From Mobula hypostoma (Eukaryota), in the NCBI RefSeq assembly GCF_963921235.1, contig NC_086105.1, positions 8,928,001 to 8,992,000 on the forward strand: a stretch of 64,000 nucleotides of DNA, read 5' to 3'. The notes beneath the pieces were generated by a model that did no database searches, was not told the DNA's origin, and saw only the letters and a list, made by a program, of their open reading frames with translations. A program made the translations under genes and the position numbers. Positions 7,801 to 57,336 of this stretch are shown here, in pieces (the stretch's first letter is position 1; each line of letters begins with the position of its first letter).

Positions 7801-8319
7801 AACCTTGGATGTGCTGGGGGCAGCGCACAAGTGTCAGCATACACTACAGTGCCAATATACAACAATATGCTCACAGTGGAGCCCCAGTTCAACAACTGGA
7901 CCCCTGCACTGTAACAAAGCCAACACAAGCTTGAGAAAGAACTTCCTCCGGGGAGAAGTACGGTCTTCTGGACTCAATATCAAATTCTCCATCTTTAGGT
8001 AACTCACTCATTCTTTGTATCAAGGTTTGCCACTTCTTCCTGACCTCATTGTGGTTCAATGTTTGTTTTGCTGTTATTTGATTTGGCCTGAATTGTAGGT
8101 TCCACAGATTTAATTTAGCAGTACATTATGCAAAGATGCATAATCTGATTCCAACTGCTGCATTAACTAAGCTGTTAGTTTGAATAACTCGTATTAATGC
8201 TGTGTAAATCTGTAAAAATATTGGTTCAAAACATGCTGTAACTGAGCAACAAAGAACTTTGTTAATTAATCCATGATTATTAGATTTACCTTTTCCTGTT
8301 TAATGTCAGTGCACATTTA

Positions 8320-10685: not shown

Positions 10686-10749
10686 TAAGGTTGGGATGAA
10701 ATTGACACAGTCTCCTCCAGAGGGTGTCAGAGATCTGAATTAACTCAGT

Positions 10750-11850: not shown

Positions 11851-11851
11851 A

Positions 11852-14825: not shown

Positions 14826-15179
14826 CAAGGGTGACCTGCAGGCTAGCAGAGGGAAGGAGCATCTTACACTTACATTGGTAGAGGCATACCTCCACCCCAC
14901 CGTCCATCATCCTAGATTAAGTGCCTCAAAAATCTGCGGAAGTGTTTAAAATATTTAAATATAATCTCGTACAATCTCAACCAAGGCTAACAGCCAAATC
15001 AAATCCATTGCAATCATGGAGGGGAATAATTCACAGAAGATCCTGATCAAATTAAATCCTTCAACTGATGGCTCACTGATCCTGATTTGTGATATCTATA
15101 AACAGACTGCTGGATCTCAGAAATAGTTCATTAGCTGTGAATCACTTGGAATCAGGGAGGATTTTGTACAATGTTTCAA

Positions 15180-15590
15180 TGGGTCTTTATTCTTTGGAAT
15201 GTAGAAGGTTGGGGGGGGACTTGATAGAGGTATTTAAAATTATGAGGGGGATAGATAGAGTTGACGTGGATAGGCTTTTTCCATTGAGAGTGGGGGAGAT
15301 TCAAACAAGGGGACATGAGTTGAGAGTTAAAGGGCAAAAGTTTAGGGGTAACACGAGGGGGAACTTCTTTACTCAGAGAGTGGTAGCTGAACGAGCTTCC
15401 AGCAGAAGTGGTTGAGGCAGGTTCGATGTTGTTGTTTAAAGCTAAATTGGACAACTATATGGACAAGAAAGAAATGGAGGGTTATGGGCTGAGTGCAGTT
15501 CGGTGGGACTAGGTGAGAGTAAGAGTTCGACAGGGACTAGAAGGGCCGAGATGGCCTGTTTCCGTGCTGTAATTGTTATATGGTTATATG
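15180..15590 (+). mobile_element. CR1-type LINE 3' fragment
   Basis: ORF GLYSLECRRLGGDLIEVFKIMRG..TRGHELRVKG..FFTQRVV followed by a short tandem tail. Confidence 0.85.
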
Positions 15591-27023: not shown

Positions 27024-27206
<183 letters not shown>

Positions 27207-28079
27207 TAATGTTACTTTCAAAATGTGGCGATGAAAAGATTGTACATAAAGCAAAAACCTTTCAAACCTGAGATACTGTCTGTAACACTTTGAGTTAAGA
27301 AAATGAAGAGTTCATGGCCAGTAATATTAACAACCACCCACAGAATGCCAGCATGACTGACTGCATACTTCCAAAGTCTTCCATATCAAATTGCCAGCAG
27401 CTGCCGAACTTCTCTGTCCATGTTGGGAATAAGTTATCTTAAACTCTTCTTAAACATACACATTTCACTTTCTTCCATAATTACAGCTATTTGTAGAAAT
27501 TGCTAGACCAGTGTTTTTAAATCAGTGAAATGATAAAAATACAGGTCTGGCAAATAATAGAAAATGAAATGTGTGATCATTTTTACCTGGTCTCCCTTTC
27601 ATCAGTGGAAAAAGTCGGCAGTCTCCTCATTAGCCACTTCGGAACAGACCAAACTGTAGTGGAACTAGGACATTTAGCTCAATGACTGTCAAAGAAGATG
27701 ATTGCACCCAACTATATTCTTGGGTTAAATCTTAATCATTCACAACTTGCTTAATTTTTTTATAAAGATGAGAAAATCTGCAGATGTTGGAAATCTAAAA
27801 CAACACACACAAAATGCTAGAGGAACTCAGCAGGTCAGGCAGCTTCTATGGAAAGGAGTAAACAGTGGACGTTTTGGGCTGAGACCCTTCATCAGGACTG
27901 AGAGAGAAGTGGGGGGAGATGCCTGAATAAAAAGGTGGGTGGGGTGAGGAGAAAGAGGCTAGTTGGAAGGCGATAGGTGAAGCAAGGTGGGTGGGAAAAG
28001 TCAAAGGCTGGAGAGAATGTGTGAGAGAGAGAGAGAGAAACTATATCAATGATGATTCAGGAGAGATCTCAGTGCTCTT

Positions 28080-29010
28080 AGCACATAGAGTAGTATTGCA
28101 CAGGAACAGGCCCTCTGGCCCACAATGTTATGCAAACTAATTAAATTGGTAATCAAATGCTGAACTAAACTTAACCCTTCTGCCCACAAAATGTCCATAC
28201 CCTTCCATCTCTTGCACATTTATGTGCCTGCCTACAAGACTTTTGAATGCCCTTATGGTGGGGCATTCAAATGCCCCTACCACCACACCACACATCTCCT
28301 TTGAACTTGCACCATCTCACCTTAAAGCGTTAAGACCATACAACATCGGAGCAGAATTAGGCCATTCAAGTCCACTCTACCATTTCATCACGGCCGATCC
28401 AGATCCCATTCAACCCCATACACCTGCCCTCTCACCATATCCCTTGATGCCCTGACCAATCAGGATTCTATCAACTTCCGCTCTCTGGTATTAGACATTT
28501 GAAACCTGGGGAAAAGATACTGGCTGTCTTCTCAGTCTATGCTTCCCTCTTATAAACTTTTATCAGGTCTCCCCTCGGCCTTAGCCGCTGCAGAGAAAAC
28601 AGCACGAGTTTGTGTAGCCTCTCCACAGAGGACATGCCCTCTAATCCAGGCAACATCCTGGTCAATCACTTCTGCACCCTTTTCAAAATCTCAACATCCT
28701 TCCCATAACGGGGCAACCAGAACCGAACGCAATACTCCAGATGAGCTTTATGAAGCTGCAACCTAACTTCTCAGCTCTCGAACTCAGTACCTCGACTATT
28801 AAAGCCAAATGTGCCATGATCCTTCTTTAGCACCCTATCCATCTTGGTAGCCATTATCCGAGAGCTACAAACTTGGACCCCAAGATCCTTTTGCTCATCG
28901 ATACTTTTAGGGTCTTGCCATTATCAGTGAACCGCCCCTTTACATTTGATCTCTTAAAGGAAACACTTTGTATTTGGCCAGGTGAAACTCTCCCTGCCAT
29001 TTCCCTGCCC
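28080..29010 (-). mobile_element. Decayed CR1-type LINE fragments
   Basis: Reverse complement of CR1 3' ORF/tail sequence, with a nested second CR1 tail. Confidence 0.65.
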
Positions 29011-29109
29011 ACATATGCAATTAATCTTACCTTGCTGTTTCCTTTTCCAGTCTGCTATTGCTGTCCACAACACTTGTATAACTAAATTGCTTGTGTATCT
29101 TACATAACT

Positions 29110-29420
29110 GTGGGCACGTGGCCAAGCGGTTAAGGCATTGGACTAGCAACCTGAAGGTTGTGAGTTTGAGCCCCAGCCGAGGCAGCGTGTTGTGTCCTTG
29201 AGCAAGGCACTTAATCACACATTGCTCTGCAATGACACTGGTGCCAAGCTGTATGGGTCCTAATGCCCTTCCCTTGGACAACATCAGTCTCGTGGAGAGG
29301 GGAGACTTGCAGCATGGGCAACTGCCTGTCTTCCATACCACCTTGCCCTGGCCTGCGCCCTGGAGAGTGAAGACTTTCCAGGCGCAGATCCATGGTCTCA
29401 CAAGACTAACAGATGCCTTT
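29110..29420 (+). mobile_element. tRNA-headed SINE
   Basis: Starts with tRNA-like A/B-box sequence GGGCACGTGGCCAAGCGGTTAAGGC...GAGTTTGAGCCCC, followed by a non-tRNA body. Confidence 0.6.
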
Positions 29421-29437
29421 TTTTTTATCTTGCATAA

Positions 29438-29773
<336 letters not shown>

Positions 29774-32397
29774 TAAACCAAATATTTGAAAGAATATAAA
29801 TTTGTGAAAGCCGAAAGAAAGAAAAAAATGATCCGTAGTGCCCTACCTGAACTGTAATTTTTGCAGAAATACAGACTCTGCAATATTAGGCCTTTTATCA
29901 CAATATTTTGACATGAGCAATCAGTGCCTCATATAGGCAATTCCTTCTAACTAACCCAGTCACTTTTGACCTCCGTCTCATGTACATGGGCCCCTCCTCA
30001 GTTTTCCTCCTGCATACAGAAGCACCTCGTCCTCCTGTACATTCAGGTGTACTTTCTCACTCTTCAAGTATGCAGTCACACTCATCGTGCCCTTTTTTGA
30101 GCATAACCTTATCATGTAATCTCCTGTTGTCAATCCACCCCTTCCTAGCTAACCACTGGTAATCGCAACCTTCACCTCACCCACAGAGAACATGCAAGCA
30201 CCCCTTTCCGAACAACACCCACCAGTTAGGTCCCCCAATCCTGTGAGTGAGCCACTTCTGGAACCCACCTCCGAGTGCCCACCCTTTCCCAGGGCCGGGG
30301 AGGTTCTGCTGCTTCTGAGAACATACGTTTGCGTGGCTCCCTTCCCCTTGCCAGGCCCACTACCTTCCCACATACTAGTTCCCTGTCATGACCCACGTCT
30401 GCATGTGTGAGCCCTAGCACCCCCAAACCTGCAATATGCATCCCTTCCCTTATTCTGCCAAATGCCACCCAACGCATCCCTTCCCTTCTGGCTATACCTG
30501 CCTGCCCACCCATGTAGTCCTTCTGAGACAGCATGCCTGCCCCTGTCACTTGCCAGTCTTCTGTCCCCATATACCAACATCTCCTTATAACACACACAAA
30601 ATGCTGGAGGAAGTCTGCAGGCCAGGCACCATTTATGGAAAAAAGTGAACAGTTGATATTTCAAGCTGAGGCCCTTCATCAGACTCGCTCTACACCTGTG
30701 GTATTCCTTCCTGGAACTAATGTGAGTGGCAGACTCCTACCCGTCTGTCTCCAGATCACATGCCGTCCCGGGACAGCCACCAACATGTTCTCAGCCTTTC
30801 CTGCCTCTACTTACACACCCTAAGCAAGTGGCAGCCCATCCCTTCCCAGCAACCTGCCCACACACCACCAGTACAAGAACCTACTTGCCCGTCCCCTTTC
30901 GAGACCGCGCTTCTGATGTCCTTGCCCGCCCCCTTCTCCGATCCCGTGTCTGCATGCCACTCATCCAGTACCCCCATCTACGTTTACACCAGCTACAAGG
31001 CCCCATTTCTTACTCCCCTACTTTCATATTGCACCCTCACTCTGACTTGCTCAATTTTACTGGTGTTTTCAGTTTTATTTCATATAGTTGTGTAAGATTT
31101 CATTCAAAATTAACAGTCTCAAAATGCTGGAGGAATTCAACACTCTATGCATGCAACAACCGGTTTCCTGTCAGCCCTCCATTAAAAGCCACCAGTTAAC
31201 AGGAAGGAAATGGAGCAGCAGTATAAAAGGCAAACAGATTAAAAATTAAAGTATTAACAATGTGGGATTTCAATTATCCCATCTATGGGAATCAATGGGG
31301 CAGCGAAATTTTAATGTAAATTTTTTTTTAAAATCATACACTGTGCTCAGTTTCATTCAAAATTAACACACACAAAATATCGGAGGAACTCAGCAGACCA
31401 GGCAGCATCTGTGGAAATTAATAATAAATAAATATTTCAGGCCAAGAATCCTGAAAAAGGGTCTCGGCCAGAAATGGCGACTTTTTTTTCTATCGATGCT
31501 GCTGAGTTCCTCCTCCAGCATTTTGTGTGTGGTGCTCTGGATTTCCAGCATCTGCAGACTTCCTCGTGGTTCTGTTGAATATTATATTGGATATGAGTTC
31601 ATTTTTGTATGTTAGTGATACAAAAAATTTAAAAAGCACATCCCGATTTTAATATATTTACACTATTTTCTCTAAATATAAGCCTCTTTTGATATCCAAT
31701 TATTTTGCTTAATGTGCATTACAAAATAGGTTTGTAAGACGAATCAATTATACAGCCTTATTTCGCAAGCACAAGAAGTCCTTCATGAATTTGAAACAGT
31801 CAAGAATTGTGGATTTGTAAAAATTTCAGTAAAGGATATTCAGTGTGTTGTGTCATGGACAGATATGATAGTTTACTAACTGTAGTGACTTTTCCCCCCT
31901 CAACTTGAATTTTACTGTTTACTTACTTTAATAATTGTCCAACTTTTATTTGTTTTATAAAATATACCTCCTTCATTGCTTTGAAAATAAACTATAAGTT
32001 TTACTACACTTTACATCATTTTTTTCTAGTTGTAATTTGGTAGGCTTCTAGTTGGAATTATCTGTAAGAATATGACCTAAAGAATGGAGACAAAGCTGAA
32101 ATCTGGAATAATAACTCCTTGAGCCTGTTCATCCACTCAGCAAGTTAATACTTGCTGCTTGTCATGTGATCAGGTGTATCAATTTCAATCTGGAACAGAA
32201 TGACTCAACATTTCTTACTCAGCAACTCTCTGGAATAGAGAAAATCCAGTTGCCACAGCATACCCTACCAAGTTAATTTCAGTTATTTCACAATATTTAT
32301 ATGTAAGTAAAATTGCTAATGTTAATGTCCAAGGAAAGGAAATGAAAAATTCTTAGTTTCTTAAAAATACTTAATAAAATTAGTTACTCTCTTTCAG

Positions 32398-32607
32398 GTA
32401 CTAATGGAGGAGTGACTCTTGTGGGTCTTGTCGCAAGTTTGCTTGGTGGAACTGTTGTTGGATTGGCCTATCTGCTAACCCAGTTGATGTTTGTGGACGA
32501 TCTGGATAGCTCACCACCCCAGTGGCCAGTTGTTTTGTATGGTGCTGTGGCAGGTTTCTTCGGTTCCATTTTGGATTCCTGCCTAGGTGCTACAATGCAG
32601 TATTCAG
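32398..32607 (+). CDS. TMEM19: TMEM19 coding exon 5 (210 nt)
   Basis: GTNGGVTLVGLVASLLGG...GSILDSCLGATMQYS, with AG/GT boundaries. Confidence 0.95.
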
Positions 32608-33607
32608 GTTTGTGCTTGAATTCTGAAATAATTAAACGTCATTTTATTTCTTCCCCCCCCCATGGGGAAAATGGAGAAATCATTCTTGTGTGCAATGTGC
32701 CTACTGCCTGTTATGCCACTGGTGTTAGGACGGTGATGAAGGTCCTCCATCTCTGGCGATGTTTCTTCCTCTTGTCAGTAGCTTCCTCTCGGTTTTCAGT
32801 ACTGTCAGTCACGCAAGTCCCAGCTGGAGACTCAGGAATGCCGTTACATAGAATAGTATAGCACAGTACTCAGTACACTCAGATGCAGAAACATTCTTCA
32901 TGGCTGTGTCCATAACAGTTTTGTTTACCAGTCAGGGTTGTTCACCTTGAGCTGAACCCCCGAACCTGGGGGTCCAGTGAACCTCTCGTTTGCAAAGGCA
33001 GATTAACAAGAGTTTAGAGTTGATCGATAAATGATGCTATTGATAAAGTGGAAGCTCAATTCTTTAGTGACGGCACTATTCACTATTTGGGAGAAATTTA
33101 CACCAATTAACTTGTCTTTTACCATTACATGCACATTAATAAACTGTAGCTGTGAGACAAGGAATCATTCTATTGAGACTGATGAAACCTTCCAACCAGT
33201 GCTGTGAATTCATAGCACACCTACATCAATACATTAATCATCTTCTTGGGCCCCGCCCCTAGCTCCCAGTGGAGCATAGGCCATCAATAGCCTTCTGTCT
33301 CCATCATCTAAAGTAGATGGTATAGTTGGAGTTTATCAATGTTTCTGTAATTCATTGCATCCACTCACTGTACAAGGGATTGGCCTCTACAGCTTCACCA
33401 GAGCCCTGTTGGCTGGCCTTATCCATTTCCACCTCTCACAACAGGGATGTGGCATTGGACTTTGAGAGGCTTAAATGCAGTCAGATCTACCACAAATTCA
33501 TACTTAAATTTTCAAATTGTTGAAATTTAATGTATATATTTTGATACTTTGATAGAAGTAAAGGTTAAATACTAAATAGAAACACAGCTTATTTGTCATC
33601 ATCATAG

Positions 33608-33901
<294 letters not shown>

Positions 33902-39600: not shown

Positions 39601-40984
39601 GGTTTCTTCCCCCTTCCTTTCCAGACCTGATAAAGGGTCTCAGCCTGAAACTGAGTGGGAGGAAACCAGAGCACCTGGAGGAAACCCACGTGGTCTCGGG
39701 AAGAACGTGCAAAGTCCGTACAGGCTGCAGCAGGAATTGAACCCGGGTCAGTGGTACTGTAAAGCAATGTGCTAACCACTACGCTATCATGCCACTCCAT
39801 ATATTATATTCCCCTCAGTAGATGTTGTCCTGCTTGCTGAATTCCTCCAGCATTTTGTGTGTATTACTCAAGACTCCAGTATTTGCAGAATCTCTTACGT
39901 TTATAGTTGAGATATTTGCATCATTGTTAGCAGTGGGTGATGTGCCAGAAGACTGGAGGACAGCGAACCGTGTACCTAATCTGCAAAGTCCCCCATTCTA
40001 TTACGCTCCCCAGTTTATTGTGAAAATGCTACCTTGATTTGACTTTCCAAAATGCAAAACCTCGCGTTTATCTGAATTAAATTCAATTAACAATTCCTCA
40101 GTTAATTTACACAGCTGATCAAAATCCCACTCTAATTTTCCATAACCTGTCTTGGACACCATCTATTTTAATGCCATCTACAAATTTACTAATCATGCCT
40201 GTTGTCCCATCCATGAAAAGATTCAATGGGCCCAGCAACAACCCTTGGGATACACCACTAGTCTCAAGCTTCCAGTCCAAGAAACAACCATCTTCCCACA
40301 ATCAAGCCAATTGTGTACCCAGCGCTTCGTCAAATTATACTGTTAATTCTGCTGTAGGGTTCTTGACAGGAAACGTTATTACCCTCTGCACAGATGCTGC
40401 TCAACCTGATATGGGGGGGGGGGCACTGTACGGGAGCAGAAAAAGCTGCATAAAATTGTAAAAGTCATCAAGTTGTGTATGTGACTGAAGTTGTAATCTC
40501 GGCCAGCTCCATCTTGGGCACTAGCCTGCTCAGTATCCAGATAACCTCAGAAGGTGGCATCCATCATTAAGGACCCCCATCACCCAGGACTTGCCCTCTT
40601 CTCATTGCTACCACCAGGAAAGAGGTCGACGGCACACACTCTGTGATTCAGGAACAGCTTCTTCCCCTCTGCCTGAATGGGCATTGAGCCCACCAACACT
40701 TCCCTCAGTATTTCCCCTCTCTTTCTGCGCTACTTATTTAATTTTTATATATGCCCTTTGTATTATATTATTACGTATTGCATTGTACTGCTGCCGCAAA
40801 AACAACATATTTCACGACAAACAACAGGAATTTCACGACATGTGCCGGTGATGTTAAGCCTAATTCTGATTCTGTGTTTCCAGCATTTTCTAGTTTTATT
40901 TCCACCATCCCCACACACCATCAGTCATGCTGCCTTACATTTGTATGCTGTGAGTTAACAAAGTCCGGAATATGAGGGTGGGAG

Positions 40985-41419
40985 AAATGGAGACGCGGAA
41001 TTCAAACCGAACCGGCGACGGAGGCGGTCACCATGGAAACGGGAGGAGGGGGGCGGGACAGGGGTCTGCGCCCCGTCCCCGCCCATTGGCGGTTAGCTTT
41101 TTCCCGCGCACCGTTCGGACTGTTTGTTGTCTTTTGAAGTGAGCGCGGCAGTGACCAATGGGACGCGGCGGAGCCGGTGACGAACGGAGCGCGATAGGGA
41201 ACGGCCGCAGAATTGGCAGCTGCAGTGGCCAATGGAACGCGGCGGAGGCGGTGACGACGGGCGGGCGAAACGAACGGCCGCAGAATTGGCAGCTGCAGTG
41301 GCCAATGGGACGCGGCGGAGCCGGTGACGATGGGAGCGCGAAACGAACGGGCACAGAATTGGCAGTGGTACCGGTGAGAGCGGGAGAGCGGGAGAGCGCG
41401 GAGTGAAGGGCTTGCTTAG
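40985..41419 (+). promoter_or_regulatory. CpG-island promoter and non-coding exon 1 of the Spo12-motif gene, with E2F, CHR, GC-box and multiple CCAAT elements; donor AG|GTAAGT at 41419/41420
   Basis: E2F-type sites TTTCCCGC 41100-41107 and GCGCGAAA 41336-41343. CHR-type sites TTTGAA 41133-41138 and TTCAAA 41001-41006. CCAAT at 41155, 41229 and 41302; ATTGG at 41085, 41212, 41285 and 41358. The 5' splice site is consensus. Confidence 0.75.
41147..41366. repeat. 73-74 bp GC-rich tandem repeat x3, each unit carrying CCAAT and ATTGG
   Basis: Unit GCAGTG(A/G)CCAATGG(G/A)ACGCGGCGGAG..GGTGACGA...GAACGG..CAGAATTGGCAG; CCAAT spacings are 74 and 73 bp. Confidence 0.9.
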
Positions 41420-43103
41420 GTAAGTGAGAGTACCTTGCATGTGAAGCAGGTGAAATACTGCGGGTAATTACTGCCTGCAATTTCACAAAAAAAGGCTCTG
41501 TTGGTCCTGATGTTTGGAAGGTGATAAGTTGTTCTGCGACTTGCTGCTCCCGCTGTAAAGGTTCTTGGTGCAGATACTATTGTATTTTATTTAAAAATCC
41601 TGCAAGAGAATGAATCTGGAGGTACCATAAGGTGACATATACGTAATGCATTTACTTTGACTTCCGCTGCTAAAACAGGTGCAATGTAAAAGCCTACGGT
41701 CCTCTCGTAGACCTGCAGCCAATTCCAGAGTTTATGCATTCTACCTTCATTTACATAACAACTAAAATAGTTTTTCCACTTATGGGGTGTGTGACTTCAA
41801 GCGTTAATGATTCATGTATGTGAGATGCTTGTATAATCATTTACAATGCTCTTGATAATTTATTTTGAAATTAACTGCTGTACTCTAAAACCCGAAGATG
41901 GATTCAGTGCACAAAAAAGACTAAGGGATGACTCGAAAGAGTAGAGCCAATTTGGTGATTTTTTTTGTTGACTGGAACTAAAACGGAATACTGGAAACAC
42001 TCAAGGTCAGGCAGTCTTGCTTTGTTAGAATTAACATTTCAGGTCAAAGGTCCTTTATCAGATCTGAACTATCAACTATTTTTTGCTTTCGAAAGATATT
42101 GCTTGACGCACTGTGTGTTTCCTGCAGTTGGCTGTTAATTCTGTTTTTATTTCAGCTTTCTGTTATCTGCAGTTTTCTTGGATGTTCTTTGTTAACCGTT
42201 TTCCATCGAGGATATGAATGAGACTGCTGCCTCGACAGTCAAATTCAATCCTAACCACTGGTGCTCTGTGGCGATACGTGATCTCATGAATGTGTGGGCT
42301 TCCTCTGGCTGTGGTTTCTGCTAACATTCTGAAGGTGTGGGTTGTTAGATAAATTAGGGCCACCGTAAATTACCCTTGGTGTGTAAGAGTGTAGTTGAAT
42401 CTGGGGAGAGTTGATTAAAGTAGGGGGAGAAATTTTTAAATGAAGTGAAATTAAAGTAGGATGTTCAGCTGTGATGGTATCGGGTTCCCTGTCTGCAAAA
42501 CCTTAAACTAAAAAGATTTTAAGCCCTATCTGGTATAGATATCTATGGGCACCCTCACTCTAGAGGTTATACTGTATCCACCTACTCTTCGGGTACTAGC
42601 TTTCTTCCCTGTCTAATCACTGCAGGGAAGGCTAGCTCTAAGTACCCACTGCTTGAGTGGAGAGTCACCCCTCCCGACGAAGGCAATATAGCCACCTAAC
42701 AGAAGTATTTTCAACAATGTTTATATTATTTTTATTGATACATGTGTAAATTTAGACATAGTTCTTAACACATTTAACACTCAGGATTTCTGTTTTGTGA
42801 AAGATTTGAGTCCCATAGGATTTACAAACTGCAAAGAATTTACAAACGGATACAATTATTACCAATTAAAAGAACATACCAATGAGTTGCAGTTGCGTGA
42901 GTCATCTGTTGCAGAAACTGAAGGTTGAGGAATGAATTCTGGTCTTTCTGTAATTCCCCTTATCATTCTGAACAGTCCCCAATGTTTTCTAATGTTTATT
43001 TAAACGCAAACAACAGGAATTCTGCAGATGCTGGAGATTCAAGCAACACACATCAGTTACTGGTGAACGCAGCAGGCCAGGCAGCATCTCTAGGAAGAGG
43101 TGC

Positions 43104-43139
43104 AGTCGACGTTTCAGGCCGAGACCCTTCGTCAGGACT
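43104..43139 (-). ncRNA. Minimal type I hammerhead ribozyme motif (Penelope-associated)
   Basis: The reverse complement reads AGUC-CUGACGA-AGG(GUCUCGG)CCU-GAA-ACGU-C/GACU. Confidence 0.75.
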
Positions 43140-46100
43140 AACTGAAGGAAGAGTGAGTAAGGGATTTGGAAGGGGGAGGGGGAGATGCAAAATGATATGA
43201 GAAGACAGGAGGGGGAGGGATGGAGCCAAGAGCTGGACAGGTGATCGGCAAAAGGGGATACGAGAGGATCATGGGACAGGAGGTCCGGGAAGAAAGACGG
43301 AGGGGGGGACCCAGATGATGGGCAAGAGGTATATTCAGAGGGACAGAGGGAGAAAAAGGAGAGTGAGAGAAAGAATGTGTGCATAAAAATGAGTAACAGA
43401 TGGGGTACGAGGGGGAGGTGGGGCCTTAGCAGAAGTTAGAGAAGTCGATGTTCATGCCATCAGGTTGGAGGCTACCCAGACGGAATATAAGGTGTTGTTC
43501 CTCCAACCTGAGTGTGGCTTCATCTTTACAGTAGAGGAGGCCGTGGATAGACATGTCAGAATGGGAATGGAATGTGGAATTAAAATGTGTGGCCACTGGG
43601 AGATCCTGCTTTCTCTGGCGGACAGAGCATAGATGTTCAGCAAAGCGGTCTCCCAGTCTGCGTTGGGTCTCGCCAATATATAAAAGGCCACATCAGGAGC
43701 ACTGGACGCAGTATATCACCCCAGTCGACTCACAGGTGAAGTGTTGCCTCACCCGGAAGGACTGTTTGGGACTGTTTGGTGACCATGGACACCTTCACAG
43801 CGATTGCGCAACCACCAACTGCGACTCCAGCCTTGAACTCCAGGCCGGGTCTTTATGTGCTGCTGTTGTGACTCCCGTCTCCCCTTCCCCCACCACCACT
43901 CCGCAGCCCCGTCTTCCTCAGATCCCACTGTCAACTGCTGGGCCCTCAGAGGCACCATCTTCCTCTCACCCCAACCCTCCCCTCTCCACTGACACCCCCA
44001 GCCTCCCCCCTCCCCCCTCTGATCCCAGCTCTCATCTGTGCCGGGTCTTTACCATCCCCTCCGATCTTCAACTGTCGGAGGCAGAACGCTCTGTTCTCAG
44101 TAAGGGCCTCACCTTTGTCCCCCTTCGCCCACACCTCAGTGAGTTCCGTGTTCGCCACGATGCGGAACTTTTCTTCCGCCGTCTCTGTCTCCGAGCCTAC
44201 TTCTTCGGCAAGGACTCTTCCACCCCCACCGATGACCCCTTCTCCCGTCTTCAACCCTCCTCCTCTTCATGGACACCCTGCTCTGGTCTTCTGCCTGCTC
44301 TGGATCTCTTTATTGCTAACTGCCGACGGGACATCAACCGTCTCGACTTTACCGCACCTTGTCCCCATTCCAACCTCACTCCTTCGGAACGCTCTGCTCT
44401 CCACTCCTTCCGCACTAATCCTAACCTTATTATTAAACCCGCCGATAAGAGGGCTGCTGTTGTAGTCTGGCATACTGACCTCTACCTTGCCGAGGCACAG
44501 CGACAACTCGCGGATACCTCCTCTTATTTACCCCTCGATCGTGACCCCACTAAGGAGCACCAGGCCATTGTCTCCCACACCATCACCAACTTTATCCGCT
44601 CAGGGGATCTCCCATCCACTGCTACCAACCTTATAGTTCCCACACCCCGCACTTCCCGTTTCTATCTCCTACCCAAGATCCACAAACCTGCCTGTCCTGG
44701 CCGACCTATTGTCTCAGCTTGCTCCTGCCCCTCCGAACTCATTTCTGCATACCTCGACACTGTTTTATCACCCCTTGTTCAATCCCTTCCGACCTATGTT
44801 CGTGACACTTCTCACGCTCTTAAATTTTTCGATGACTTTAAGTTCCCTAGCCCCCACCGCTTTATTTTCACCATGGATGTCCAGTCCTTATATACTTCCA
44901 TCCTCCATCAGGAAGGTCTCAAAGCTCTACGCTTCTTTTTGGATTCCAGACCTAATCAGTTCCCCTCTACCACCACTCTGCTCTGTCTAGCGGAATTAGT
45001 CCTGACTCCTAATAATTTCTCCTTTGGCTCCTCCCACTTCCTCCAAACTAAAGGTGTAGCTATGGGCACCCGTATGGGTCCTAGCTATGCCTGCCTTTTT
45101 GTTGGGTTTGTGGAACAATCTATGTTCTGTGCCTATTCTGGTATCTATCCCCCACTTTTCCTTCGCTACATCGACGACTGCATTGGCGCTGCTTCCTACA
45201 CGCATGCAGAACTCGTTGACTTTATTAACTTTGCCTCCAACTTTCACCCTGCCCTCAAGTTTACCTGGTCCATTTCCGACACCTCCCTCCCCTTTCTAGA
45301 TCTTTCTGTCTCTGTCTCTGGAGACAGCTTATCCACTGATGTCTACTATAAGCCTACTGACTCTCACAGCTATCTGGACTATTCCTCTTCTCATCCTGTC
45401 TCTTGCAAAAACGCCATCCCCTTCTCGCAATTCCTCCGTCTCCGCCGCATCTGCTCTCAGGATGAGGCTTTTCATTCTAGGACGAGGGAGATGTCTTCCT
45501 TTTTTAAAGAAAGGGGCCTCCCTTCCTCCACTATCAACTCTGCTCTTAAACGCATCTCCCCCATTTCACGTACATCTGCTCTCACTCCATCCTCCCGCCA
45601 CCCCACTAGGAATAGGGTTCCCCTGGTCCTCACCTACCACCCCACCAGCCTCCGGGTCCAACATATTATTCTCCGTAACTTCCGCCACCTCCAATGGGAT
45701 CCCACCACTAAGCACATCTTTCCCTCCCCCCCCCTGCATTCCGCAGGGATCGCTCCCTACACAACTCCCTTGTCCATTCGTCCCCCCCATCCCTCCCTAC
45801 TGATCTCCCTCCTGGCACTTATCCGTGTAAGCGGAACAAGTGCTACACATGCCCTTACACTTCCTCCCTTACCACCATTCAGGGCCGCAAACAGTCCTTC
45901 CAGGTGAGGCAACACTTCACCTGTGAGTCGACTGGGGTGATATACTGCGTCCGGTGCTCCTGATGTGGCCTTTTATATATTGGCGAGACCCGACGCAGAC
46001 TGGGAGACCGCTTTGCTGAACATCTACGCTCTGTCCGCCAGAGAAAGCAGGATCTCCCAGTGGCCACACATTTTAATTCCACATCCCATTCCCATTCTGA

Positions 46101-46620
46101 CATCATCAAAGTTGCTGGTGAACGCAGCAGGCCAGGCAGCATCTATAGGAAGAGGCGCAGTCGACGTTTCAGGCCGAGACCCTTCGTCAGGACATTTTGA
46201 CATGTCTATCCACGGCCTCCTCTACTGTAAAGATGAAGCCACACTCAGGTTGGAGGAACAACACCTTATATTCCGTCTGGGTAGCCTCCAACCTGATGGC
46301 ATGAACATCGACTTTAACTTCCGCTAAGGCTTCACCTCCCCCTCGTACCCCATCTGTTACTTATTTTTATGCACACATTCTTTCTCTCACTCTCCTTTTT
46401 CTCCCTCTGTCCCTCTGAATATACCTCTTGCCCATCCTCTGGGTCCCCCCCCCCCGTCTTTCTTCCCAGACCTCCTGTCCCATGATCCTCTCGTATCCCC
46501 TTTTGCCAATCACCTGTCCAGCTCTTGGCTCCATCCCTCCCCCTCCTGTCTTCTCCTATCATTTTGGATCTCCCCCTCCCCCTCCAACTTTCAAATCCCT
46601 TCCTCACTCTTCCTTCAGTT

Positions 46621-46656
46621 AGTCCTGACGAAGGGTCTCGGCCTGAAACGTCGACT
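46621..46656 (+). ncRNA. Minimal type I hammerhead ribozyme motif, predicted cleavage after C46652
   Basis: AGTC CTGACGA AGG GTCTCGG CCT GAAAC GTC GACT: core CUGANGA/GAAA, stem I AGUC/GACU, stem II AGG/CCU, palindromic ACGU stem III and a GUC triplet. Confidence 0.78.
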
Positions 46657-47764
46657 GCACCTCTTCCTAGAGATGCTGCCTGGCCTGCTGCGTTCACCAG
46701 TAACTTTGATGTGTGTTGCTTTTCTAATGTTTAGCCTGTTTTGCTACTAGATTACGTCATCTGCATGTGATGTTTTCCAGATACTTTTGCTGGGGCAAAG
46801 TAATGCTCATAGATAGTCTAAAAGCTTTAGGATCAATGGTGCAAATAATGTAGTTGTTCCCTGGTTTAATGTAAGCCATTTAACATTGGCCCATTGTCTT
46901 GTGTTTGGCTGAGGCACACAAGAATCCCACTTTAGAAACTTACTGGAATTAATTAAAATATTTATTTAGAAAGGCAATGATGAATTGGGGATAGTTGTGT
47001 CGACTTGCTAAGGAACTGCTGTGATTAACTAACTTTGTTATTCCCAGCTGATGGCAAATTCACTGGGGACAGATATGCTAGCTATAGTCTATATTAAATT
47101 TGTCAAGGTTCCATATAGCAGCCTACTCTTTTTTTTGTACAATTGAACACATCATTAACAGTTAAACACTCAGCAATCTCTCTGGGAGGGGACAGAGATG
47201 GGCTGACTCCTCAACCTCGGGAGGGAGGACAATCTCGTCTGGGCCGAAGTACTTCACACTCGATGACTGTGAGCCCCTTGGCCTCTCTGTTTAAGGTGCC
47301 ATTTGGCCTCCCTAGTTGTCTGCTGCCACGTTCCTCGATCTGGCAGGTGGTGAATGAATGAAAAGCCCACAATGATGGCAAGGGAGACACCACAGAAGAG
47401 AGCACCAGCCTTATGTTCCACATCCACCACAGGGTCTGCAGTTGTCGAACAGGTTGACCTTGCTCACGTGCCAGACACGGAGGCGGGGCTCTTGGGCTAA
47501 TGAAGTGGCCTTCCTTGTGGAGGGAGTGTCCCAGGGACGGGAATTGTGTGGGATAATGGAGAGGCAGTGTGTTTGGGGGAAGGAAACTAAAGAAGCTAAA
47601 ATGTGGTTCTTTTTCCTCAGCTGATGTAGAGAGATTGTTTTGTATCATTTGTTTTCTATATTTATTGATATCTTCAAAGTTGTATTTATCTATAGAGCTT
47701 GTATCTAATAGTCAACCTTAAACAGATTTTTCTTTTTTTTTCCCCTTTTCCTCAGATTTTTGAG

Positions 47765-47856
47765 ATGAGCACAAACAAGGCCTTGACTAAACATAGTGAC
47801 CCAAACCAGCAGCCACCAACTCCAAGTCTAATGAAGAGAAAACGAGCGCAAGAAAA
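47765..47856 (+). CDS. Spo12-motif small protein, coding exon 1 (exon acceptor at 47756): MSTNKALTKHSDPNQQPPTPSLMKRKRAQE(K)
   Basis: Long polypyrimidine tract plus CTCAG acceptor, ATG at 47765, and donor AA|GTAAGT (phase 2). Confidence 0.8.
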
Positions 47857-47938
47857 GTAAGTACTTTGGAAAAGAAGATAACTTGAATAGCCACACTTGG
47901 TGTTGTTTTGGTGTACTTAAATTGTTTTTCATGTCTAG

Positions 47939-48022
47939 GAAACTTTTCAGAAGCCCTACGGACAGCATGTTGTCACCATGCTCACAGAGACTGATGAAAC
48001 CAAAGCACGTCAATCCTACAGA
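47939..48022 (+). CDS. Spo12-motif small protein, coding exon 2: KLFRSPTDSMLSPCSQRLMKPKHVNPT(E)
   Basis: An 82-nt GT-AG intron precedes it. The 84-nt exon is phase 2-2, ends at donor GA|GTAAGT, and contains SPTDxxxSPCSxxL. Confidence 0.85.
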
Positions 48023-48295
48023 GTAAGTTTTATTATTTGCAGTTTTAATGCATCACCATTGTAAATCACAGTCACTTAATTACCTGTCCACATGTTAATT
48101 CAATACAATAAAAATGTTTTTCTAATAAACCTGCTTTCATCACACCCCCTAAAATGGGGCTAGAGCATAATATCTGAAGGAACTGATGGGGGTAGCTTTT
48201 TTTAAAAAATTAAATAATTACGGGAATTTTTTTTAATATAGCAATGTCACTTCGGTGCAGATTGAGATACTATTAGTGGATAGTGGATACTATTG

Positions 48296-48765
48296 AGAGA
48301 GAGGAGATTTACAAGGATATTGCCTGGATTGGAGAGTGTGCCTTATGAGAATAGGTTGAGTGAACATAGCCTTTTCTCCTTAGAGTGGCGGAGGATGAGA
48401 GGTGACCCGATAGAGGTGTATAAGATGATGAGAGGCATTGCTCATGTGGATAGCCAGAGGCTTTTTCCCAGGGTTGAAATGGTTAACACAAGGGGATATA
48501 ATTTAAAGTGCTTGGAAGTAGGTACAAGGGGGATGTCAGAGGTAAGTTTTTCACACAGTGGTGGGTGCATGGAATGCATTGCCAGCAAAGGTGATAGAGT
48601 GGATACAATAGGGTCTTTTAAGAGACTCTTGGATGAGTATGTGGAGCTTAGAAAAATAGAGGGCTATGTGGTAGGGAAATTCTAGGCAGTTTCTAGAGTA
48701 AGTTACATGATCGGCACAACATTTTGGGCCAAAGGGCCTGTAATGTGCTGTAGATTTCCATGTTC
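48296..48765 (+). mobile_element. CR1-type LINE 3' fragment
   Basis: ORF RRFTRILPGLE..YENRL..LFSLE.RRMRGD.IEVYKMMRG. Confidence 0.85.
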
Positions 48766-49298
48766 TCCAGAATTTTGAGTCTGACTTTCTTGTTTGTCAT
48801 TTCTTCGTGATTTTGGCCTTGCAATAATTCCCATTTTCCTCATGTCACTTAAACATTAGCTGTTATTTGCAACTATCTGTTCAAACAATCACCTGTTCCT
48901 CCTGTATTTGTATTTCATTCATCAACATGTACCAGTCTGACATTCGTACTTTGTTTTGCTCTCTCCAACATCTTTTGTTACTGTATTGTAATTAGAAATA
49001 ACATGTTTAAGATAAAGTTCTTCATTCTTGGCTGCTTGATTAACAAAGTTTGCATATAGTTTAAAAAAGATACAGTTGCATATAGTTTTCTCATGGACTT
49101 GATTTCCTAAAGACCCACTTGCTTTTGTTTTAAGGAAGTATCTTGGTAAAACTTATTTTGCCTCATTTTTCAGCAAGGTGCGGGAAGCAAACTTTGCTGG
49201 CAAGCAGCAATGTACAATTTAGTCTTGTGTGCTATTAACCCAAAAATGAGCATAAACAATGTACCTGAAGAATTCTTCACTCTGATTAAGGGCTTTCT

Positions 49299-50062
49299 CA
49301 GTATGATGGACTCTGGTTAATTGGGACCAGTACATTTTGACCCAATTAATCTGCTGGCCCAATTAACTGAAGTTTCATGGAAATAGTTAAAAAGGAATAA
49401 ACAAAAGATGAGCTACTATTTAACTGAGTAATAAATTATGTATTTAAATGAAATACAAATTAGAACACTACCAATACTATTAAGGTACGATAAAACTTAA
49501 ATAGTTGCTAATAGTTATCGACGGAGGAATTCATCCAGTGTTCACTGCTATTTTCTTTTGATTGCCTGTAAATGAACAAAATTAGTGCAGACACCTGGTT
49601 CAGATAATGGACTGTCTTCATACAAGCTATTGACGATTGTATCCTCCAAATCTTTAATTTCATTGTAACATCAAAGAAGATTATCGGTAACTTCAATTAA
49701 TCGTAGGTCCTAACTTGTTACATTAGTGAAAGCATTTTCACTCCTGGCTGTCTCTGGCATCTTGAAATTATAGTGAGCAAAACATTACTGAATTGTCTTA
49801 ATTGCTTATCTCTTGCCAACTATCGGTGACAAAAATCACTTTTTTGAACACAAATACATGCAATTGATGTTATTTATAAACTGTTTGTTTTAAGCGCGGT
49901 GTAGTGTCTAACAAGTGCATGCGATTGATACTAGATCGAAATTATTTGGCAACCGTCTCCTGTCCCAAATAAGTGGCATAGTGTCCCAAGTAAACAAAGG
50001 AAATCCCACCTATTTTCTCCATTAGTTTTTTAAGAGTTGTCCCAATTAACCAAAATCTACTG
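49299..50062. mobile_element. Pogo/Tigger-like non-autonomous DNA transposon
   Basis: Imperfect TIRs ..CTGGTTAATTGGGAC / GTCCCAATTAACCAAAATCTACTG|TA. Confidence 0.6.
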
Positions 50063-50364
50063 TACATGTTTTAAAATGCGGTTGATTTATTGATTGAGAA
50101 GTTCTAGTTCTATCAGCTTAGAATTCTTGTGGTTTGTTGAGGAATTTTGGATCTTATTCCTATCTTCAGTAGTTTGGTAGGAAATGTGTCATTTCTGACT
50201 CACAGTAGAAGCCAACTGAAAGTTTATTCATAAATATGCAATTGGAATGGACACTTTGCCAATGTTAATCTTTTACTGTTAAAACTGTCTAATTGGAATA
50301 TCAAGTTGCTTGACAATGTAAATCTGGGTACACAAGTTACAACCTAATGTTTAATTGTCTACAG

Positions 50365-50473
50365 GTTTCAAAATGGCAAGATTACTGCACAACACGAATC
50401 AATTCTTGACGACAAAGAGAATAACTTCAGTACTCGGGAGCAGAGACTTTCTTTTGGAAGAAATGACAACTGA
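50365..50473 (+). CDS. Spo12-motif small protein, last coding exon: FQNGKITAQHESILDDKENNFSTREQRLSFGRNDN*
   Basis: Branch-like CTAAT at 50344 and a TACAG acceptor. The phase matches and the frame is open to TGA 50471-50473. It encodes DKEN, and AATAAA follows at 50715 and 50760. Confidence 0.72.
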
Positions 50474-50714
50474 TTTTTTTTTGCGTGGTGGTGGGGAAGT
50501 GGAATATAATGTACAGTGACTTTAAGTGCTCTGTACAGAGGAAGAATATATAAGCTCTATTCCCTTAATTTAAATTTCATGTGCACTTCTTTGGGACTAT
50601 ATACACTACTGATGTTTTTATTAGGTAAAAATTATTGTAAGATTATGGGATATAAATCTTGCACTTCCACTTTGTCATACAATGTACAGGTATTTTTTTT
50701 TTGGATCATTCAAA

Positions 50715-50765
50715 AATAAAGGTCACTCTCTATCTGGTTTCCTCCTGTTTAAGAGCCTGAATAAA
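50715..50765 (+). terminator. Candidate polyadenylation signals of the Spo12-motif gene
   Basis: AATAAA at 50715-50720 and 50760-50765, 240-290 nt after the stop. Confidence 0.5.
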
Positions 50766-50997
50766 AGAAATTAATACTTTAATCCTGCAATGGCAAGTGG
50801 AAAATATTTCAATATGAAGCTTGTATTTAATTCTTAAAAGATGTGAAGGGGCTTTACAGGAGTATGGGTGCTAAGTCAATTGATATGGGGGGAGGGGCCA
50901 CTTCCTGTACCATAAGAACTTCAGAGTCTTATTGACAGATTAGGACATTAGGATTTGGTATAATGGGTGAGGTTTCTTTAGTTAAACCGTTAGACTT

Positions 50998-51869
50998 TGT
51001 CACACAAGCCTGACCATTCGGTGTTTAGTGTGGAGTATAAGTAGCTGAGTTTTGGGTAACCGAGTGTATAGAAGGTGACATGGAATCTTAAGAACATACA
51101 ATCTTAATAAGGTGCAGATCTTGCGGTCCATGATGTTGTGCCAACATTTTAACATACTCCAAGATGAATCTAATGCTTCCTTCCCAAATAGCCACCCGTT
51201 TTTCTTTCTTTCTGGAAGAAATGAAGATCCTGAGGATTTTAACAACTGTAATGCCTTGGTTCACATCTTTACTGTTATGCTGTGGGTGTTTCACTGGCCA
51301 GCTCTGTGGGAGTGGTCTGTTTTGCTTTCAGCATGTTTGGGTTATTGTCGAAGATAAGGGATGATGTGGAATGTGTGCCATCCAATTAGCAGGAGGTTTT
51401 CTTGGTGAGAGACAATAAGATTGATCTCGTTTCTTTTTGTTCGGGGGGAGAAGATGCTGGGGAGAATGGGTCGTAGCATACAATCCGGTGGGAGACCAGT
51501 TTGTTGGAGATGGATTGATGGACGTTCGGAAGGTGGTGTGGACATTCACGCTGTCCGAGGGGCCAGTGCGTGAGTGATGGAAGTTCAAGATGAGTTTCAA
51601 CTTGTGCACATTTGACTGTTTAATTAGAAAGGGCCCTTTTCTTTTTGTTATTCTTTACTAACCCTTAAGTTTCTTAAATATTCCTTTTAATTATGTGCAG
51701 TGTACTGTCTGGTTATTTTGTGGCACCAGTGTGAAACAGTGTGGCAAATTACACAGTATCCACACAAACAAGGGTTTGGGGTGGGAGAGTTCCTCAATCT
51801 CGTGAATTTAGTGGGGTCGGAGGTTGTCTTCCCCAGACTTACACTGCCAAGGAAACCGGGGGTTTCACA
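50998..51869. mobile_element. Possible solo LTR (about 870 bp)
   Basis: TGT...ACA termini, flanks ACTT/ACTG (imperfect 4-bp TSD), and no coding signal inside. Confidence 0.45.
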
Positions 51870-57207: not shown

Positions 57208-57336
57208 ATGGCGAGTGGCGGCAAAACCTACTCGTTTAAAGTTGTCCTGCTCGGGGAAGGCTGCGTGGGGAAGACATCACTGGTTCTGAGATACTGTGAG
57301 AACAAATTCAACGACAAGCACATCACTACGCTTCAG
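57208..57336 (+). CDS. RAB21: RAB21 exon 1 coding part
   Basis: MASGGKTYSFKVVLLGEGCVGKTSLVLRYCENKFNDKHITTLQ|GT, containing the Rab21-diagnostic P-loop GEGCVGKTS. Confidence 0.96.

What the first reader, a model, noticed from the sequence alone, without database searches (positions are those of the whole stretch)
40985..50765. Hidden vertebrate micro-gene encoding a 94-aa protein with a fungal Spo12 (FEAR network) motif, between TMEM19 and RAB21
Seen in sequence: a CpG-island exon with donor at 41419, an acceptor at 47755, and three phase-compatible GT-AG coding exons (47765-47856, 47939-48022, 50365-50473). They splice to MSTNKALTKHSDPNQQPPTPSLMKRKRAQEKKLFRSPTDSMLSPCSQRLMKPKHVNPTEFQNGKITAQHESILDDKENNFSTREQRLSFGRNDN*, followed by AATAAA. 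Every exon is below the ORF-track cutoff. Established knowledge (motif recalled from memory): F-x-SPTD-x3-SPCS-x-[KR]L is the conserved core of yeast Spo12/Bns1, in which two CDK-type SP sites 7 residues apart are needed for early-anaphase Cdc14 release. Here S36 and S43 have that same spacing. Spo12 is usually treated as having no vertebrate counterpart, and I know of no such gene between TMEM19 and RAB21 in human. Inference: this is a retained Spo12-like mitotic/meiotic exit regulator in a cartilaginous fish, possibly lost or unannotated in other vertebrates.
Basis: partly seen in the sequence, partly recalled or inferred. Interest (0 to 1): 0.93.

Follow-up and report, generated by a model that had tools for sequence, protein, structure and literature searches.

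The report
Expressed Spo12-family micro-gene in a shark
Between TMEM19 and RAB21 this cartilaginous-fish genome carries a real, spliced and strongly conserved gene for a 94-residue disordered protein of the Spo12 family, known so far only from yeast work, and the same gene sits at the same place in other sharks, sturgeons and a frog, so a yeast cell-cycle regulator can now be tested in vertebrates.

Summary
Both coding junctions appear in assembled RNA contigs from three runs, with no mismatches in two of them.

The motif exon passes Pfam's own threshold for Spo12 (30 bits against a cut-off of 20.5). It is 13/16 identical to a yeast Spo12-family protein over F.SPTD.MLSPCSQ[KR]L.

Orthologues lie in the same TMEM19 > gene > RAB21 position, with the same 92-nt first coding exon and intron phase, in a bamboo shark, a sturgeon and a frog. 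Against the bamboo shark, synonymous sites are saturated while dN is 0.12.

The gene is not wholly hidden. Five other vertebrate genomes annotate it as a "hypothetical protein" with the Pfam domain. This exact protein is absent from a 15-billion-protein collection, and I found no paper on an animal Spo12.

The most likely function is inferred from a 2025 fission-yeast preprint: a Cdk1-phosphorylated stoichiometric inhibitor of PP2A-B55, probably cleared through a conserved KEN box. A budding-yeast-style role in Cdc14 release is less likely.

Earlier notes of this scan cover only this same stretch.

The parts
40901..41346 (+). CpG-island promoter. It holds three tandem 73-nt units (41125-41344), each with an inverted and a forward CCAAT box. 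There are 3 CCAAT and 4 ATTGG in all, plus TTTGAA at 41133 and TTTCCCGC at 41100.
   Evidence: CpG observed/expected 1.07-1.38. Repeat family D1. Motif positions. The promoter role is inferred from position upstream of the transcribed first exon and was not tested.
41347..41419 (+). Non-coding exon 1. The 5' limit is a minimum; the true start site is not mapped. It ends ...GCTTAG|gtaagt, and that TAG is in frame with the downstream ATG.
   Evidence: GT donor. RNA contig X1 record 2 extends 73 nt beyond exon 2, and its match runs 2 nt (AG) past the acceptor, as expected if exon 1 ends in AG. X1 and X7 hold 0.33-0.42 of the words of 41250-41419.
41420..47755 (+). Intron 1 (6.3 kb). It contains a retroelement at 43046-46714.
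   Evidence: No RNA depth at 46802-47707 apart from repeats. Inverted repeats and a 784-aa RT-like ORF.
47756..47856 (+). Exon 2. It holds 9 nt of 5'UTR and then the ATG at 47765. It encodes residues 1-30 and two bases of codon 31, including the conserved T19-P and the KRKR basic stretch.
   Evidence: Polypyrimidine tract and AG acceptor, GT donor. Contig pieces 47756-47856. A 92-nt coding part with a phase-2 intron is conserved in bamboo shark, sturgeon and frog.
47939..48022 (+). Exon 3. It holds the Spo12 core KLFRSPTDSMLSPCSQRLMK with S36 and S43.
   Evidence: Joint 47856>47939 in four runs. Pfam Spo12 30 bits, E 4.8e-7. 13/16 identical to yeast P0074.
50365..50473 (+). Coding part of exon 4. 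This is the divergent C-terminal tail with the conserved DKEN (KEN box) and a shark-only EQRLSFGR, followed by the stop codon.
   Evidence: Joint 48022>50365 in three runs. KEN aligned in window, two sharks, sturgeon and frog.
50474..50771 (+). 3'UTR with AATAAA at 50715 and 50760.
   Evidence: Contigs end at 50702, 50738 and 50771. Signals located.
27048..33889 (+). Upstream neighbour TMEM19 (four detected coding exons).
   Evidence: tblastn with pieces of the sturgeon DUF92 gene, E 1e-19 to 1e-36.
57208..57336 (+). Downstream neighbour RAB21, first coding exon.
   Evidence: Open frame that starts MASGGKTYSF and carries the LGEGCVGKTS P-loop. A Ras-family gene lies in the same position in bamboo shark and frog.

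Best explanation
This is a genuine four-exon gene: one non-coding CpG-island exon and three small coding exons. It encodes a 94-residue, largely disordered protein that is a vertebrate member of the Spo12 family. The gene was present at the TMEM19-RAB21 locus in the common ancestor of jawed vertebrates and is kept under strong purifying selection. This much is shown.

The following is inferred. Like fission-yeast Spo12, the protein is phosphorylated by Cdk1 on the two proline-directed serines seven residues apart (S36 and S43). In that state it docks between the B55 regulatory and catalytic subunits of PP2A and acts as a stoichiometric inhibitor, which reinforces Cdk1 substrate phosphorylation in mitosis or meiosis. 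The conserved upstream T19-P and KRKR(Q) element may serve priming or nuclear import. The invariant C-terminal KEN box may hand the protein to APC/C-Cdh1 for destruction at mitotic exit. The multi-CCAAT promoter suggests transcription in proliferating or G2/M cells.

My odds: real gene and Spo12-family member about 0.95; PP2A-B55 inhibitor mechanism about 0.5.
For: Gene reality:
- GT-AG exons and exact ORF.
- Spliced RNA contigs from two coded organisms.
- Exon-1 words held in the same runs.
- The only coding difference in the second organism is at 47990, AGA>AGG, which I read as synonymous from the exon-3 frame. Its 3'UTR has several changes.

Selection and orthology:
- Window against Chiloscyllium: 40 of 52.5 synonymous sites differ against 25 of 220.5 non-synonymous. 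dN is 0.058 over residues 1-59.
- Same locus, strand order and intron phase in shark, sturgeon and frog.

Family:
- Pfam Spo12 is above the gathering score in the window peptide, two sharks, sturgeon, frog, sponge and mites.
- S36, P37, T38, D39, S43, P44 and L49 are invariant in 19 animal proteins.
- 13/16 identity to a Lachancea Spo12-family protein.
- The nearest ESM-Atlas clusters are Spo12 families.

Mechanism:
- bioRxiv 10.1101/2025.10.28.685054 reports that the 90-aa disordered S. pombe Spo12 binds Pab1/B55 and needs S54. It predicts pS54 on a basic patch and S47, exactly seven residues upstream, in the PP2A active site, and the same for S. cerevisiae S118/S125.
- The AF2 model of the shark orthologue is disordered (pLDDT 59) with two short helices beside the sites, as described for the yeast protein.
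- Yeast Spo12 is listed as a known APC substrate (PMC3128521), and KEN is kept in all five vertebrate sequences and the sponge.
Against: - No biochemical or structural test of PP2A binding was possible here. The mechanism rests on one preprint, and part of that preprint rests on AlphaFold3 models.
- Animal proteins match only positions 2-19 of the 35-position fungal domain, so part of the yeast interaction surface may be missing.
- All three proline-directed sites are minimal (S/T-P without a basic residue at +3).
- The shark profile found no annotated homologue from any mammal, bird or teleost among 1.84 billion cluster representatives. The function is therefore dispensable or replaced in many vertebrates.
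- The tissue and cell-cycle phase of expression are unknown, because run metadata are coded.
- The exon 1 junction is not directly shown.
Confidence: 0.6

Rival explanations
1. One reading: the protein works as budding-yeast Spo12 was classically described, as a FEAR-network factor whose Cdk phosphorylation promotes early-anaphase release of Cdc14 from a nucleolar anchor.
For: It has the same core motif and the same two serines that are required for Cdc14 release in S. cerevisiae (S118/S125; Tomson 2009 as cited in PMC6620034). Sharks also carry a C-terminal EQRLSF that resembles the LxF cyclin-docking motif used by yeast Spo12.
Against: S. pombe Spo12 does not regulate localisation of the Cdc14 homologue Clp1 (preprint), so this role is not a family-wide property. 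By established knowledge, not tested here, Net1 and Fob1, the yeast partners, have no known vertebrate counterparts, and PP2A-B55 rather than Cdc14 dominates mitotic exit in animals. The LxF-like tail is missing from sturgeon and frog. The preprint argues that even the FEAR role is a consequence of PP2A-Cdc55 inhibition.
Confidence: 0.08
2. It is a true conserved Spo12-family protein, but its phospho-motif serves another partner in animals. Candidates are Cks/Cdk1 itself, Pin1, Plk1 or an importin. PP2A-B55 is not its target.
For: The second half of the fungal domain is not conserved in animals, while an animal-wide upstream element (A)TP[AS]..KR[KR]Q has been kept or added. Disordered proteins built from short motifs change partners easily.
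Against: The residues that the yeast work places in the PP2A active site and on the basic patch are precisely the invariant ones in animals. B55, the catalytic subunit and their surfaces are highly conserved among eukaryotes (established knowledge).
Confidence: 0.25
3. It is not an independent protein-coding gene. It could be a non-coding transcript with a chance ORF, or alternative exons of TMEM19 or RAB21.
For: The exons are tiny, there is no protein-level evidence, and the exact protein is absent from a 15-billion-protein collection.
Against: Saturated synonymous change against dN 0.12, a frame and intron phase kept from sharks to a frog, and a Pfam match above threshold. The gene has its own CpG island and its own poly(A) signals, with contig ends 6.4 kb before RAB21's start. 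RAB21 has a separate CpG island near 56.9 kb. Independent annotations in three genomes call it a separate gene.
Confidence: 0.03

Closest known systems
Schizosaccharomyces pombe Spo12 (Wis3), 90 aa
   Same: Nearly the same size (94 against 90 aa). Both are disordered with short helices next to the sites. Both have two SP sites exactly seven residues apart inside a Spo12 domain. Both are small basic proteins.
   Different: Only the first half of the fungal domain is matched. The vertebrate protein has a conserved upstream TP plus KRKR element and a C-terminal KEN box. The fission-yeast sequence itself was not available to me for a direct alignment. PP2A-B55 binding is shown for yeast only.
Saccharomyces cerevisiae Spo12 / Bns1 and their Lachancea relative (P0074)
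   Same: F.SPTD.MLSPCSQ[KR]L is 13/16 identical to P0074. There is a basic KR.Q element about 12-16 residues upstream in both. Yeast Spo12 is a known APC substrate, and the vertebrate protein keeps a KEN box.
   Different: The yeast protein matches the whole 35-position Pfam profile at 70 bits, the shark only positions 2-19 at 30 bits. The FEAR/Cdc14 context of budding yeast has no evident vertebrate equivalent.
ENSA/ARPP19 and FAM122A (PABIR1), the known animal PP2A-B55 inhibitors
   Same: They are small disordered proteins that inhibit PP2A-B55 stoichiometrically. The preprint describes the predicted Spo12 binding mode as reminiscent of theirs.
   Different: There is no sequence relationship: the FDSGDY Greatwall site is absent from the 94-aa sequence. 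Activation would be directly by Cdk1 rather than by Greatwall. The similarity is a proposed working analogy, not membership.
Unnamed animal Spo12-domain proteins (mites Tetranychus, Oppia, Medioppia, Halotydeus; sponge Ephydatia)
   Same: They share the pattern (A)TP[AS]..KR[KR]Q ... F/V.SPTD..[LF]SPC[ST]Q[KR]L.[KR], and all pass the Pfam threshold.
   Different: Their N-terminal extensions and tails are unrelated. KEN is seen in the sponge and the vertebrates but not in the arthropod sequences aligned.

Membership tests
Spo12 family (Pfam PF05032) | Score above Pfam's curated gathering threshold | tested here: met
   Window exon-3 peptide scores 30.0 bits against 20.5, E 4.8e-7. Orthologues score 21.8-32.4 bits.
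Spo12 family (Pfam PF05032) | Match over the whole 35-position domain | tested here: not met
   Only profile positions 2-19 align in sharks, frog, sponge and mites, and 2-28 in sturgeon. The yeast control P0074 covers 1-35 at 70 bits.
Spo12 family (Pfam PF05032) | Two proline-directed serines exactly seven residues apart in the core SPTD...SPC[ST] | tested here: met
   S36 and S43 in the window protein. S, P, T, D, S and P are invariant across 19 animal sequences. 13/16 identity with yeast P0074.
Spo12 family (Pfam PF05032) | Small, intrinsically disordered protein with short helices flanking the sites | tested here: met
   94 aa. The AF2 model of orthologue P0002 with a 19-sequence alignment has mean pLDDT 59.4 and helices at 20-31 and 44-50 only. 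This matches the preprint's description.
Spo12 family (Pfam PF05032) | Phosphorylation of the two serines by Cdk1 | not testable with these tools
   Only the minimal S-P consensus can be read from the sequence.
Spo12 family as PP2A-B55 inhibitors (bioRxiv 2025.10.28.685054) | Phospho-dependent binding to and inhibition of B55-PP2A | not testable with these tools
   No complex prediction or assay is available here. Single-chain AF2 only.
Spo12 family | Cell-cycle-dependent destruction by APC/C | tested here: inconclusive
   A KEN box is present and is kept in the window protein, two other sharks, sturgeon, frog and sponge within an otherwise fast-evolving tail (dN 0.26). Degradation itself was not tested.
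FEAR network component (budding-yeast sense) | Promotes Cdc14 release from a nucleolar Net1/Fob1 anchor | not testable with these tools
   It is not a family-wide trait: S. pombe Spo12 does not control Clp1 localisation.
Endosulfine (ENSA/ARPP19) | FDSGDY motif with the Greatwall-phosphorylated serine | tested here: not met
   No such motif in the 94-aa translation. The only Pfam hit is Spo12.

The most novel reading that the evidence does not exclude
Spo12 is not a fungal peculiarity. It would be an ancestral eukaryotic, directly Cdk1-activated inhibitor of PP2A-B55, with members in fungi, animals and apparently plants. Non-amniote vertebrates (sharks, sturgeons, frogs) would still run this third inhibitor alongside ENSA/ARPP19 and FAM122A. 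Mammals, birds and teleosts would have lost it or diverged beyond recognition. That would give a natural experiment on how the mitotic kinase-phosphatase switch was rewired.
Probability: 0.4. Interest if true: 0.8.

Novelty: new member of a known kind. Interest (0 to 1): 0.62.

Why it matters
Spo12 has been studied for decades only in yeasts. A 2025 preprint recasts it as the founder of a class of PP2A-B55 inhibitors switched on directly by Cdk1. Its authors say sequence homologues in other eukaryotes are hard to find, and they point to FAM122A as a possible analogue.

Here a sequence-level homologue is shown to be transcribed, spliced, syntenic and under purifying selection in vertebrates. 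The exact residues that the yeast work places in the PP2A active site and on its basic patch are kept.

This makes the question directly testable: does the Cdk1 > Spo12 -| PP2A-B55 loop exist in animals? A frog orthologue exists, so egg-extract biochemistry is a natural route. The apparent absence from annotated mammalian, bird and teleost proteomes raises the question of what replaced it there.

It is also a reminder that genes with three coding exons of about 90 nt escape ORF-based annotation. This exact protein is in no collection I could query.

Tried and rejected
- A literature hit for "Spo12" in Schistosoma turned out to be a sample label, SPO12H.
- The one teleost hit, P0006 from Prochilodus (635 aa, five stretches), is an Ig V-set repeat protein with ...LLPCSCTDPNTRP... 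and is not a homologue.
- Biopython's NG86 returned dS = -1. My own Nei-Gojobori count showed this is saturation, with pS 0.76. So no finite dN/dS can be quoted for the shark pair.
- Promoter DNA does not align between species, as expected at that divergence.
- Repeating the word-index search at E up to 10 added only one fungal protein.
- One broad literature query was badly posed and returned nothing relevant.
- Searches for "Spo12-like", "Spo12 homolog" and PF05032 found no paper on an animal member.
- I considered a bidirectional or TMEM19/RAB21-linked transcript. I rejected it because the gene has its own CpG island, its own poly(A) signals and separate gene models in three other genomes.

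Full report
1. WHAT IS IN THE SEQUENCE

- Exon 2 begins after a polypyrimidine tract and AG at 47756, and the ATG is at 47765.
- The three coding segments 47765-47856, 47939-48022 and 50365-50473 are each flanked by AG and GTAAGT-type donors.
- Together they give a 285-nt ORF whose translation is the 94-aa protein quoted in the finding.
- The last three bases of the proposed first exon (…GCTTAG|gtaagt, donor after 41419) form a TAG in frame with this ATG, three codons upstream of it.
- No ATG occurs in the last 73 nt of exon 1 or in the 9 nt of exon 2 before the start. The ATG at 47765 is therefore the natural start.
- The first exon lies in a CpG island at 40901-41500 (GC 0.60-0.66, CpG observed/expected 1.07-1.38).
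- AATAAA occurs at 50715 and 50760.

2. IS IT TRANSCRIBED AND SPLICED?

Public RNA runs hold 17-24% of the sampled words of 47700-50800. That is about the share the exons make up of this stretch.

Contigs of four runs were laid on 46500-51000:
- The joint 47856>47939 (GT..AG) appears in all four runs.
- The joint 48022>50365 (GT..AG) appears in three runs.
- X1 record 2 (598 nt) and X2 record 8 (617 nt) cover exons 2-4 with no mismatch and end at 50702 and 50771.
- Both contigs continue beyond 47756, by 73 and 25 nt, so there is an upstream exon.
- The X1 match runs two letters (AG) past the acceptor, as expected if the upstream exon ends in AG.

X1 and X7 also hold 33-42% of the words of 41250-41419. 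That fits a first exon of about 70 nt or more ending at 41419. I could not lay that junction directly, so it is supported only indirectly.

In the second coded organism, the only coding difference is at 47990 (AGA>AGG), which I read as synonymous from the exon-3 frame. Its 3'UTR carries several substitutions and a 3-nt deletion.

3. IS IT A CODING GENE UNDER SELECTION?

A word-index search found two shark proteins at 80% and 77% identity. Both are called "hypothetical protein" and both carry a precomputed Spo12 domain.

An exhaustive HMMER search of 1.84 billion cluster representatives with a shark profile gave 23 hits. They include sturgeons (Acipenser oxyrinchus, Huso huso, 80 aa), the frog Pelobates cultripes (80 and 99 aa isoforms), mites and the sponge Ephydatia. 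The one teleost hit is an Ig-repeat false positive.

The genomic loci show conserved synteny:
- In Chiloscyllium and Pelobates the gene is followed on the same strand by a Ras-family gene.
- In Acipenser it is preceded by a DUF92 (TMEM19) gene.
- In the window, TMEM19 exons lie at 27048-33889 and RAB21 exon 1 at 57208-57336, all on the + strand.

The first coding exon is 92 nt in all four species, so the phase-2 intron falls in the same codon.

Window against Chiloscyllium:
- 40 of 52.5 synonymous sites differ, which is saturation.
- Only 25 of 220.5 non-synonymous sites differ, giving dN 0.12.
- Over residues 1-59 the counts are 28 synonymous against 8 non-synonymous changes, giving dN 0.058.

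A chance ORF or a non-coding RNA cannot produce this pattern.

4. WHAT FAMILY?

- The 27-residue exon-3 peptide alone scores 30.0 bits against Pfam Spo12 (gathering score 20.5, E 4.8e-7).
- Sharks, sturgeon, frog, sponge and mites all pass the threshold.
- A yeast family member recovered with the animal profile (Lachancea, P0074) is 13/16 identical to the shark over F.SPTD.MLSPCSQ[KR]L.
- In an alignment of 19 animal sequences, S36, P37, T38, D39, S43, P44 and L49 are invariant, and K24, R25 and C45 nearly so.
- The ESM Atlas places the orthologue next to Ascomycota Spo12 clusters and next to a PF05032 cluster made mostly of plant sequences. The family therefore looks pan-eukaryotic.

One defining feature is not met. 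Animals match only positions 2-19 of the 35-position profile, while the yeast control covers 1-35 at 70 bits. In return, animals share an upstream element, (A)TP[AS]..KR[KR]Q. A weaker echo (FKRQNQ) is visible in the yeast protein.

5. HOW IT PROBABLY WORKS

The following is inferred, not shown.

The classical view makes S. cerevisiae Spo12 a FEAR-network factor. Its Cdk sites S118 and S125 are needed for early Cdc14 release (Tomson 2009 as cited in PMC6620034). Its mechanism was described as not understood (PMC2605245).

A preprint of October 2025 (10.1101/2025.10.28.685054) reports the following for the 90-aa disordered S. pombe Spo12:
- It is found next to Pab1/B55 in a manner that depends on S54.
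- Its overexpression phenotype needs pab1.
- S54 phosphorylation rises when B55 is removed.
- AlphaFold3 places pS54 on a basic patch between B55 and the catalytic subunit. It places the serine exactly seven residues upstream in the active site. The same holds for the budding-yeast protein.
- It does not regulate localisation of the Cdc14 homologue Clp1.

The shark protein keeps exactly these residues and this spacing. It has the same size. In an AF2 model of its orthologue it is disordered (mean pLDDT 59), with two short helices at 20-31 and 44-50 flanking the sites.

I therefore take Cdk1-activated stoichiometric inhibition of PP2A-B55 as the most likely activity, at about 0.5.

Further inferences:
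- KEN is invariant in the five vertebrate sequences and the sponge, although the tail around it evolves fast (dN 0.26). Yeast Spo12 is a known APC substrate. This suggests destruction by APC/C-Cdh1.
- T19-P, 17 to 24 residues N-terminal to the serines, could be a Cks-type priming site. This rests on established knowledge of multisite Cdk phosphorylation and was not tested.
- KRKR may be a nuclear import signal.
- The promoter has three 73-nt tandem units carrying 3 CCAAT and 4 ATTGG boxes, a TTTGAA at 41133 and a TTTCCCGC at 41100.
- The Chiloscyllium CpG island, about 5.7 kb upstream of its ATG, also has TTTGAA 24 nt before a CCAAT box. The spacing in the window is 22 nt.
- This resembles G2/M promoters but is only suggestive.

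6. COMPARISON WITH WHAT IS KNOWN, AND NOVELTY

By the family's curated threshold and by its signature motif, the protein is a member of the Spo12 family.

It is not entirely hidden. Automated annotations of five other vertebrate genomes already predict it as a hypothetical protein, and databases tag the domain. This exact protein, however, is absent from a collection of 15 billion proteins.

Full-text searches for Spo12-like, Spo12 homologue, Spo12 domain and PF05032 found no paper on an animal member. The 2025 preprint never mentions animals. It states that homologues are hard to find by sequence and proposes FAM122A as a possible family member.

No annotated mammalian, bird or teleost protein was recovered, although mite and sponge proteins were. 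This suggests loss or missed annotation in those lineages. It could not be tested on genomic DNA here.

I class the finding as a new member of a known kind. It has real interest for the cell-cycle field because it makes the Spo12-PP2A idea testable in vertebrates.

7. EARLIER NOTES OF THE SCAN

Only this same stretch was noted before. Two sibling notes cover its promoter and its short motifs. I checked parts of both: the motif positions, and the conservation of KEN and the TP/SP sites.

Noticed in passing
window 43046-46714: A retroelement lies inside intron 1. It has a 784-aa ORF (43553-45907) with a weak reverse-transcriptase hit (19 bits). About 720-nt inverted terminal repeats flank it (43046-43768 against 45888-46714, 94-99% complementary). 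This is a DIRS-like or Penelope-like layout. Its ends reach word depths of 1e5 in RNA contigs.
   Followed up: partly
window 41125-41344: The promoter contains three tandem 73-nt units (68-93% identical). Each carries an ATTGG and a CCAAT box about 18 nt apart. A fourth partial unit follows at 41345-41365.
   Followed up: partly
L001 4310-4338 and window 41133-41159: In both the bamboo shark and the window, the CpG island upstream of the gene has TTTGAA 22-24 nt before a CCAAT box, although the DNA is otherwise unalignable. This may be a conserved cell-cycle promoter module.
   Followed up: partly
window 50440-50463 (residues 84-91): The three sharks share a C-terminal EQRLSFGR, an LxF-like motif with R at -1. 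It resembles the mitotic-cyclin docking motif described for yeast Spo12. It is absent from sturgeon and frog.
   Followed up: no
window 48161-48764 and 49218-50123: Interspersed repeats in intron 3 are present at very high depth, with many variant letters, in all four RNA runs. They produce many spurious joints in the read-laying output.
   Followed up: no
L003 (Pelobates cultripes) 10001-16530: The frog has a second annotated isoform (P0004, 99 aa). It shares the N-terminus and Spo12 core but replaces the KEN-containing tail with an unrelated sequence. This could be intron retention or an alternative last exon.
   Followed up: no
proteins P0017 / P0029: A UniRef entry labelled Opuntia streptacantha (a cactus) clusters at 90% identity with the spider-mite Tetranychus urticae Spo12-like protein. 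This is probably mite contamination of a plant transcriptome.
   Followed up: no
L004 (Prochilodus magdalenae) 1450-9689: A 635-aa Ig V-set repeat protein scores E 8e-8 against the shark profile through a repeated ...SVLLPCSCTDPNTRP... stretch. It is a false positive worth remembering for motif-driven searches.
   Followed up: yes
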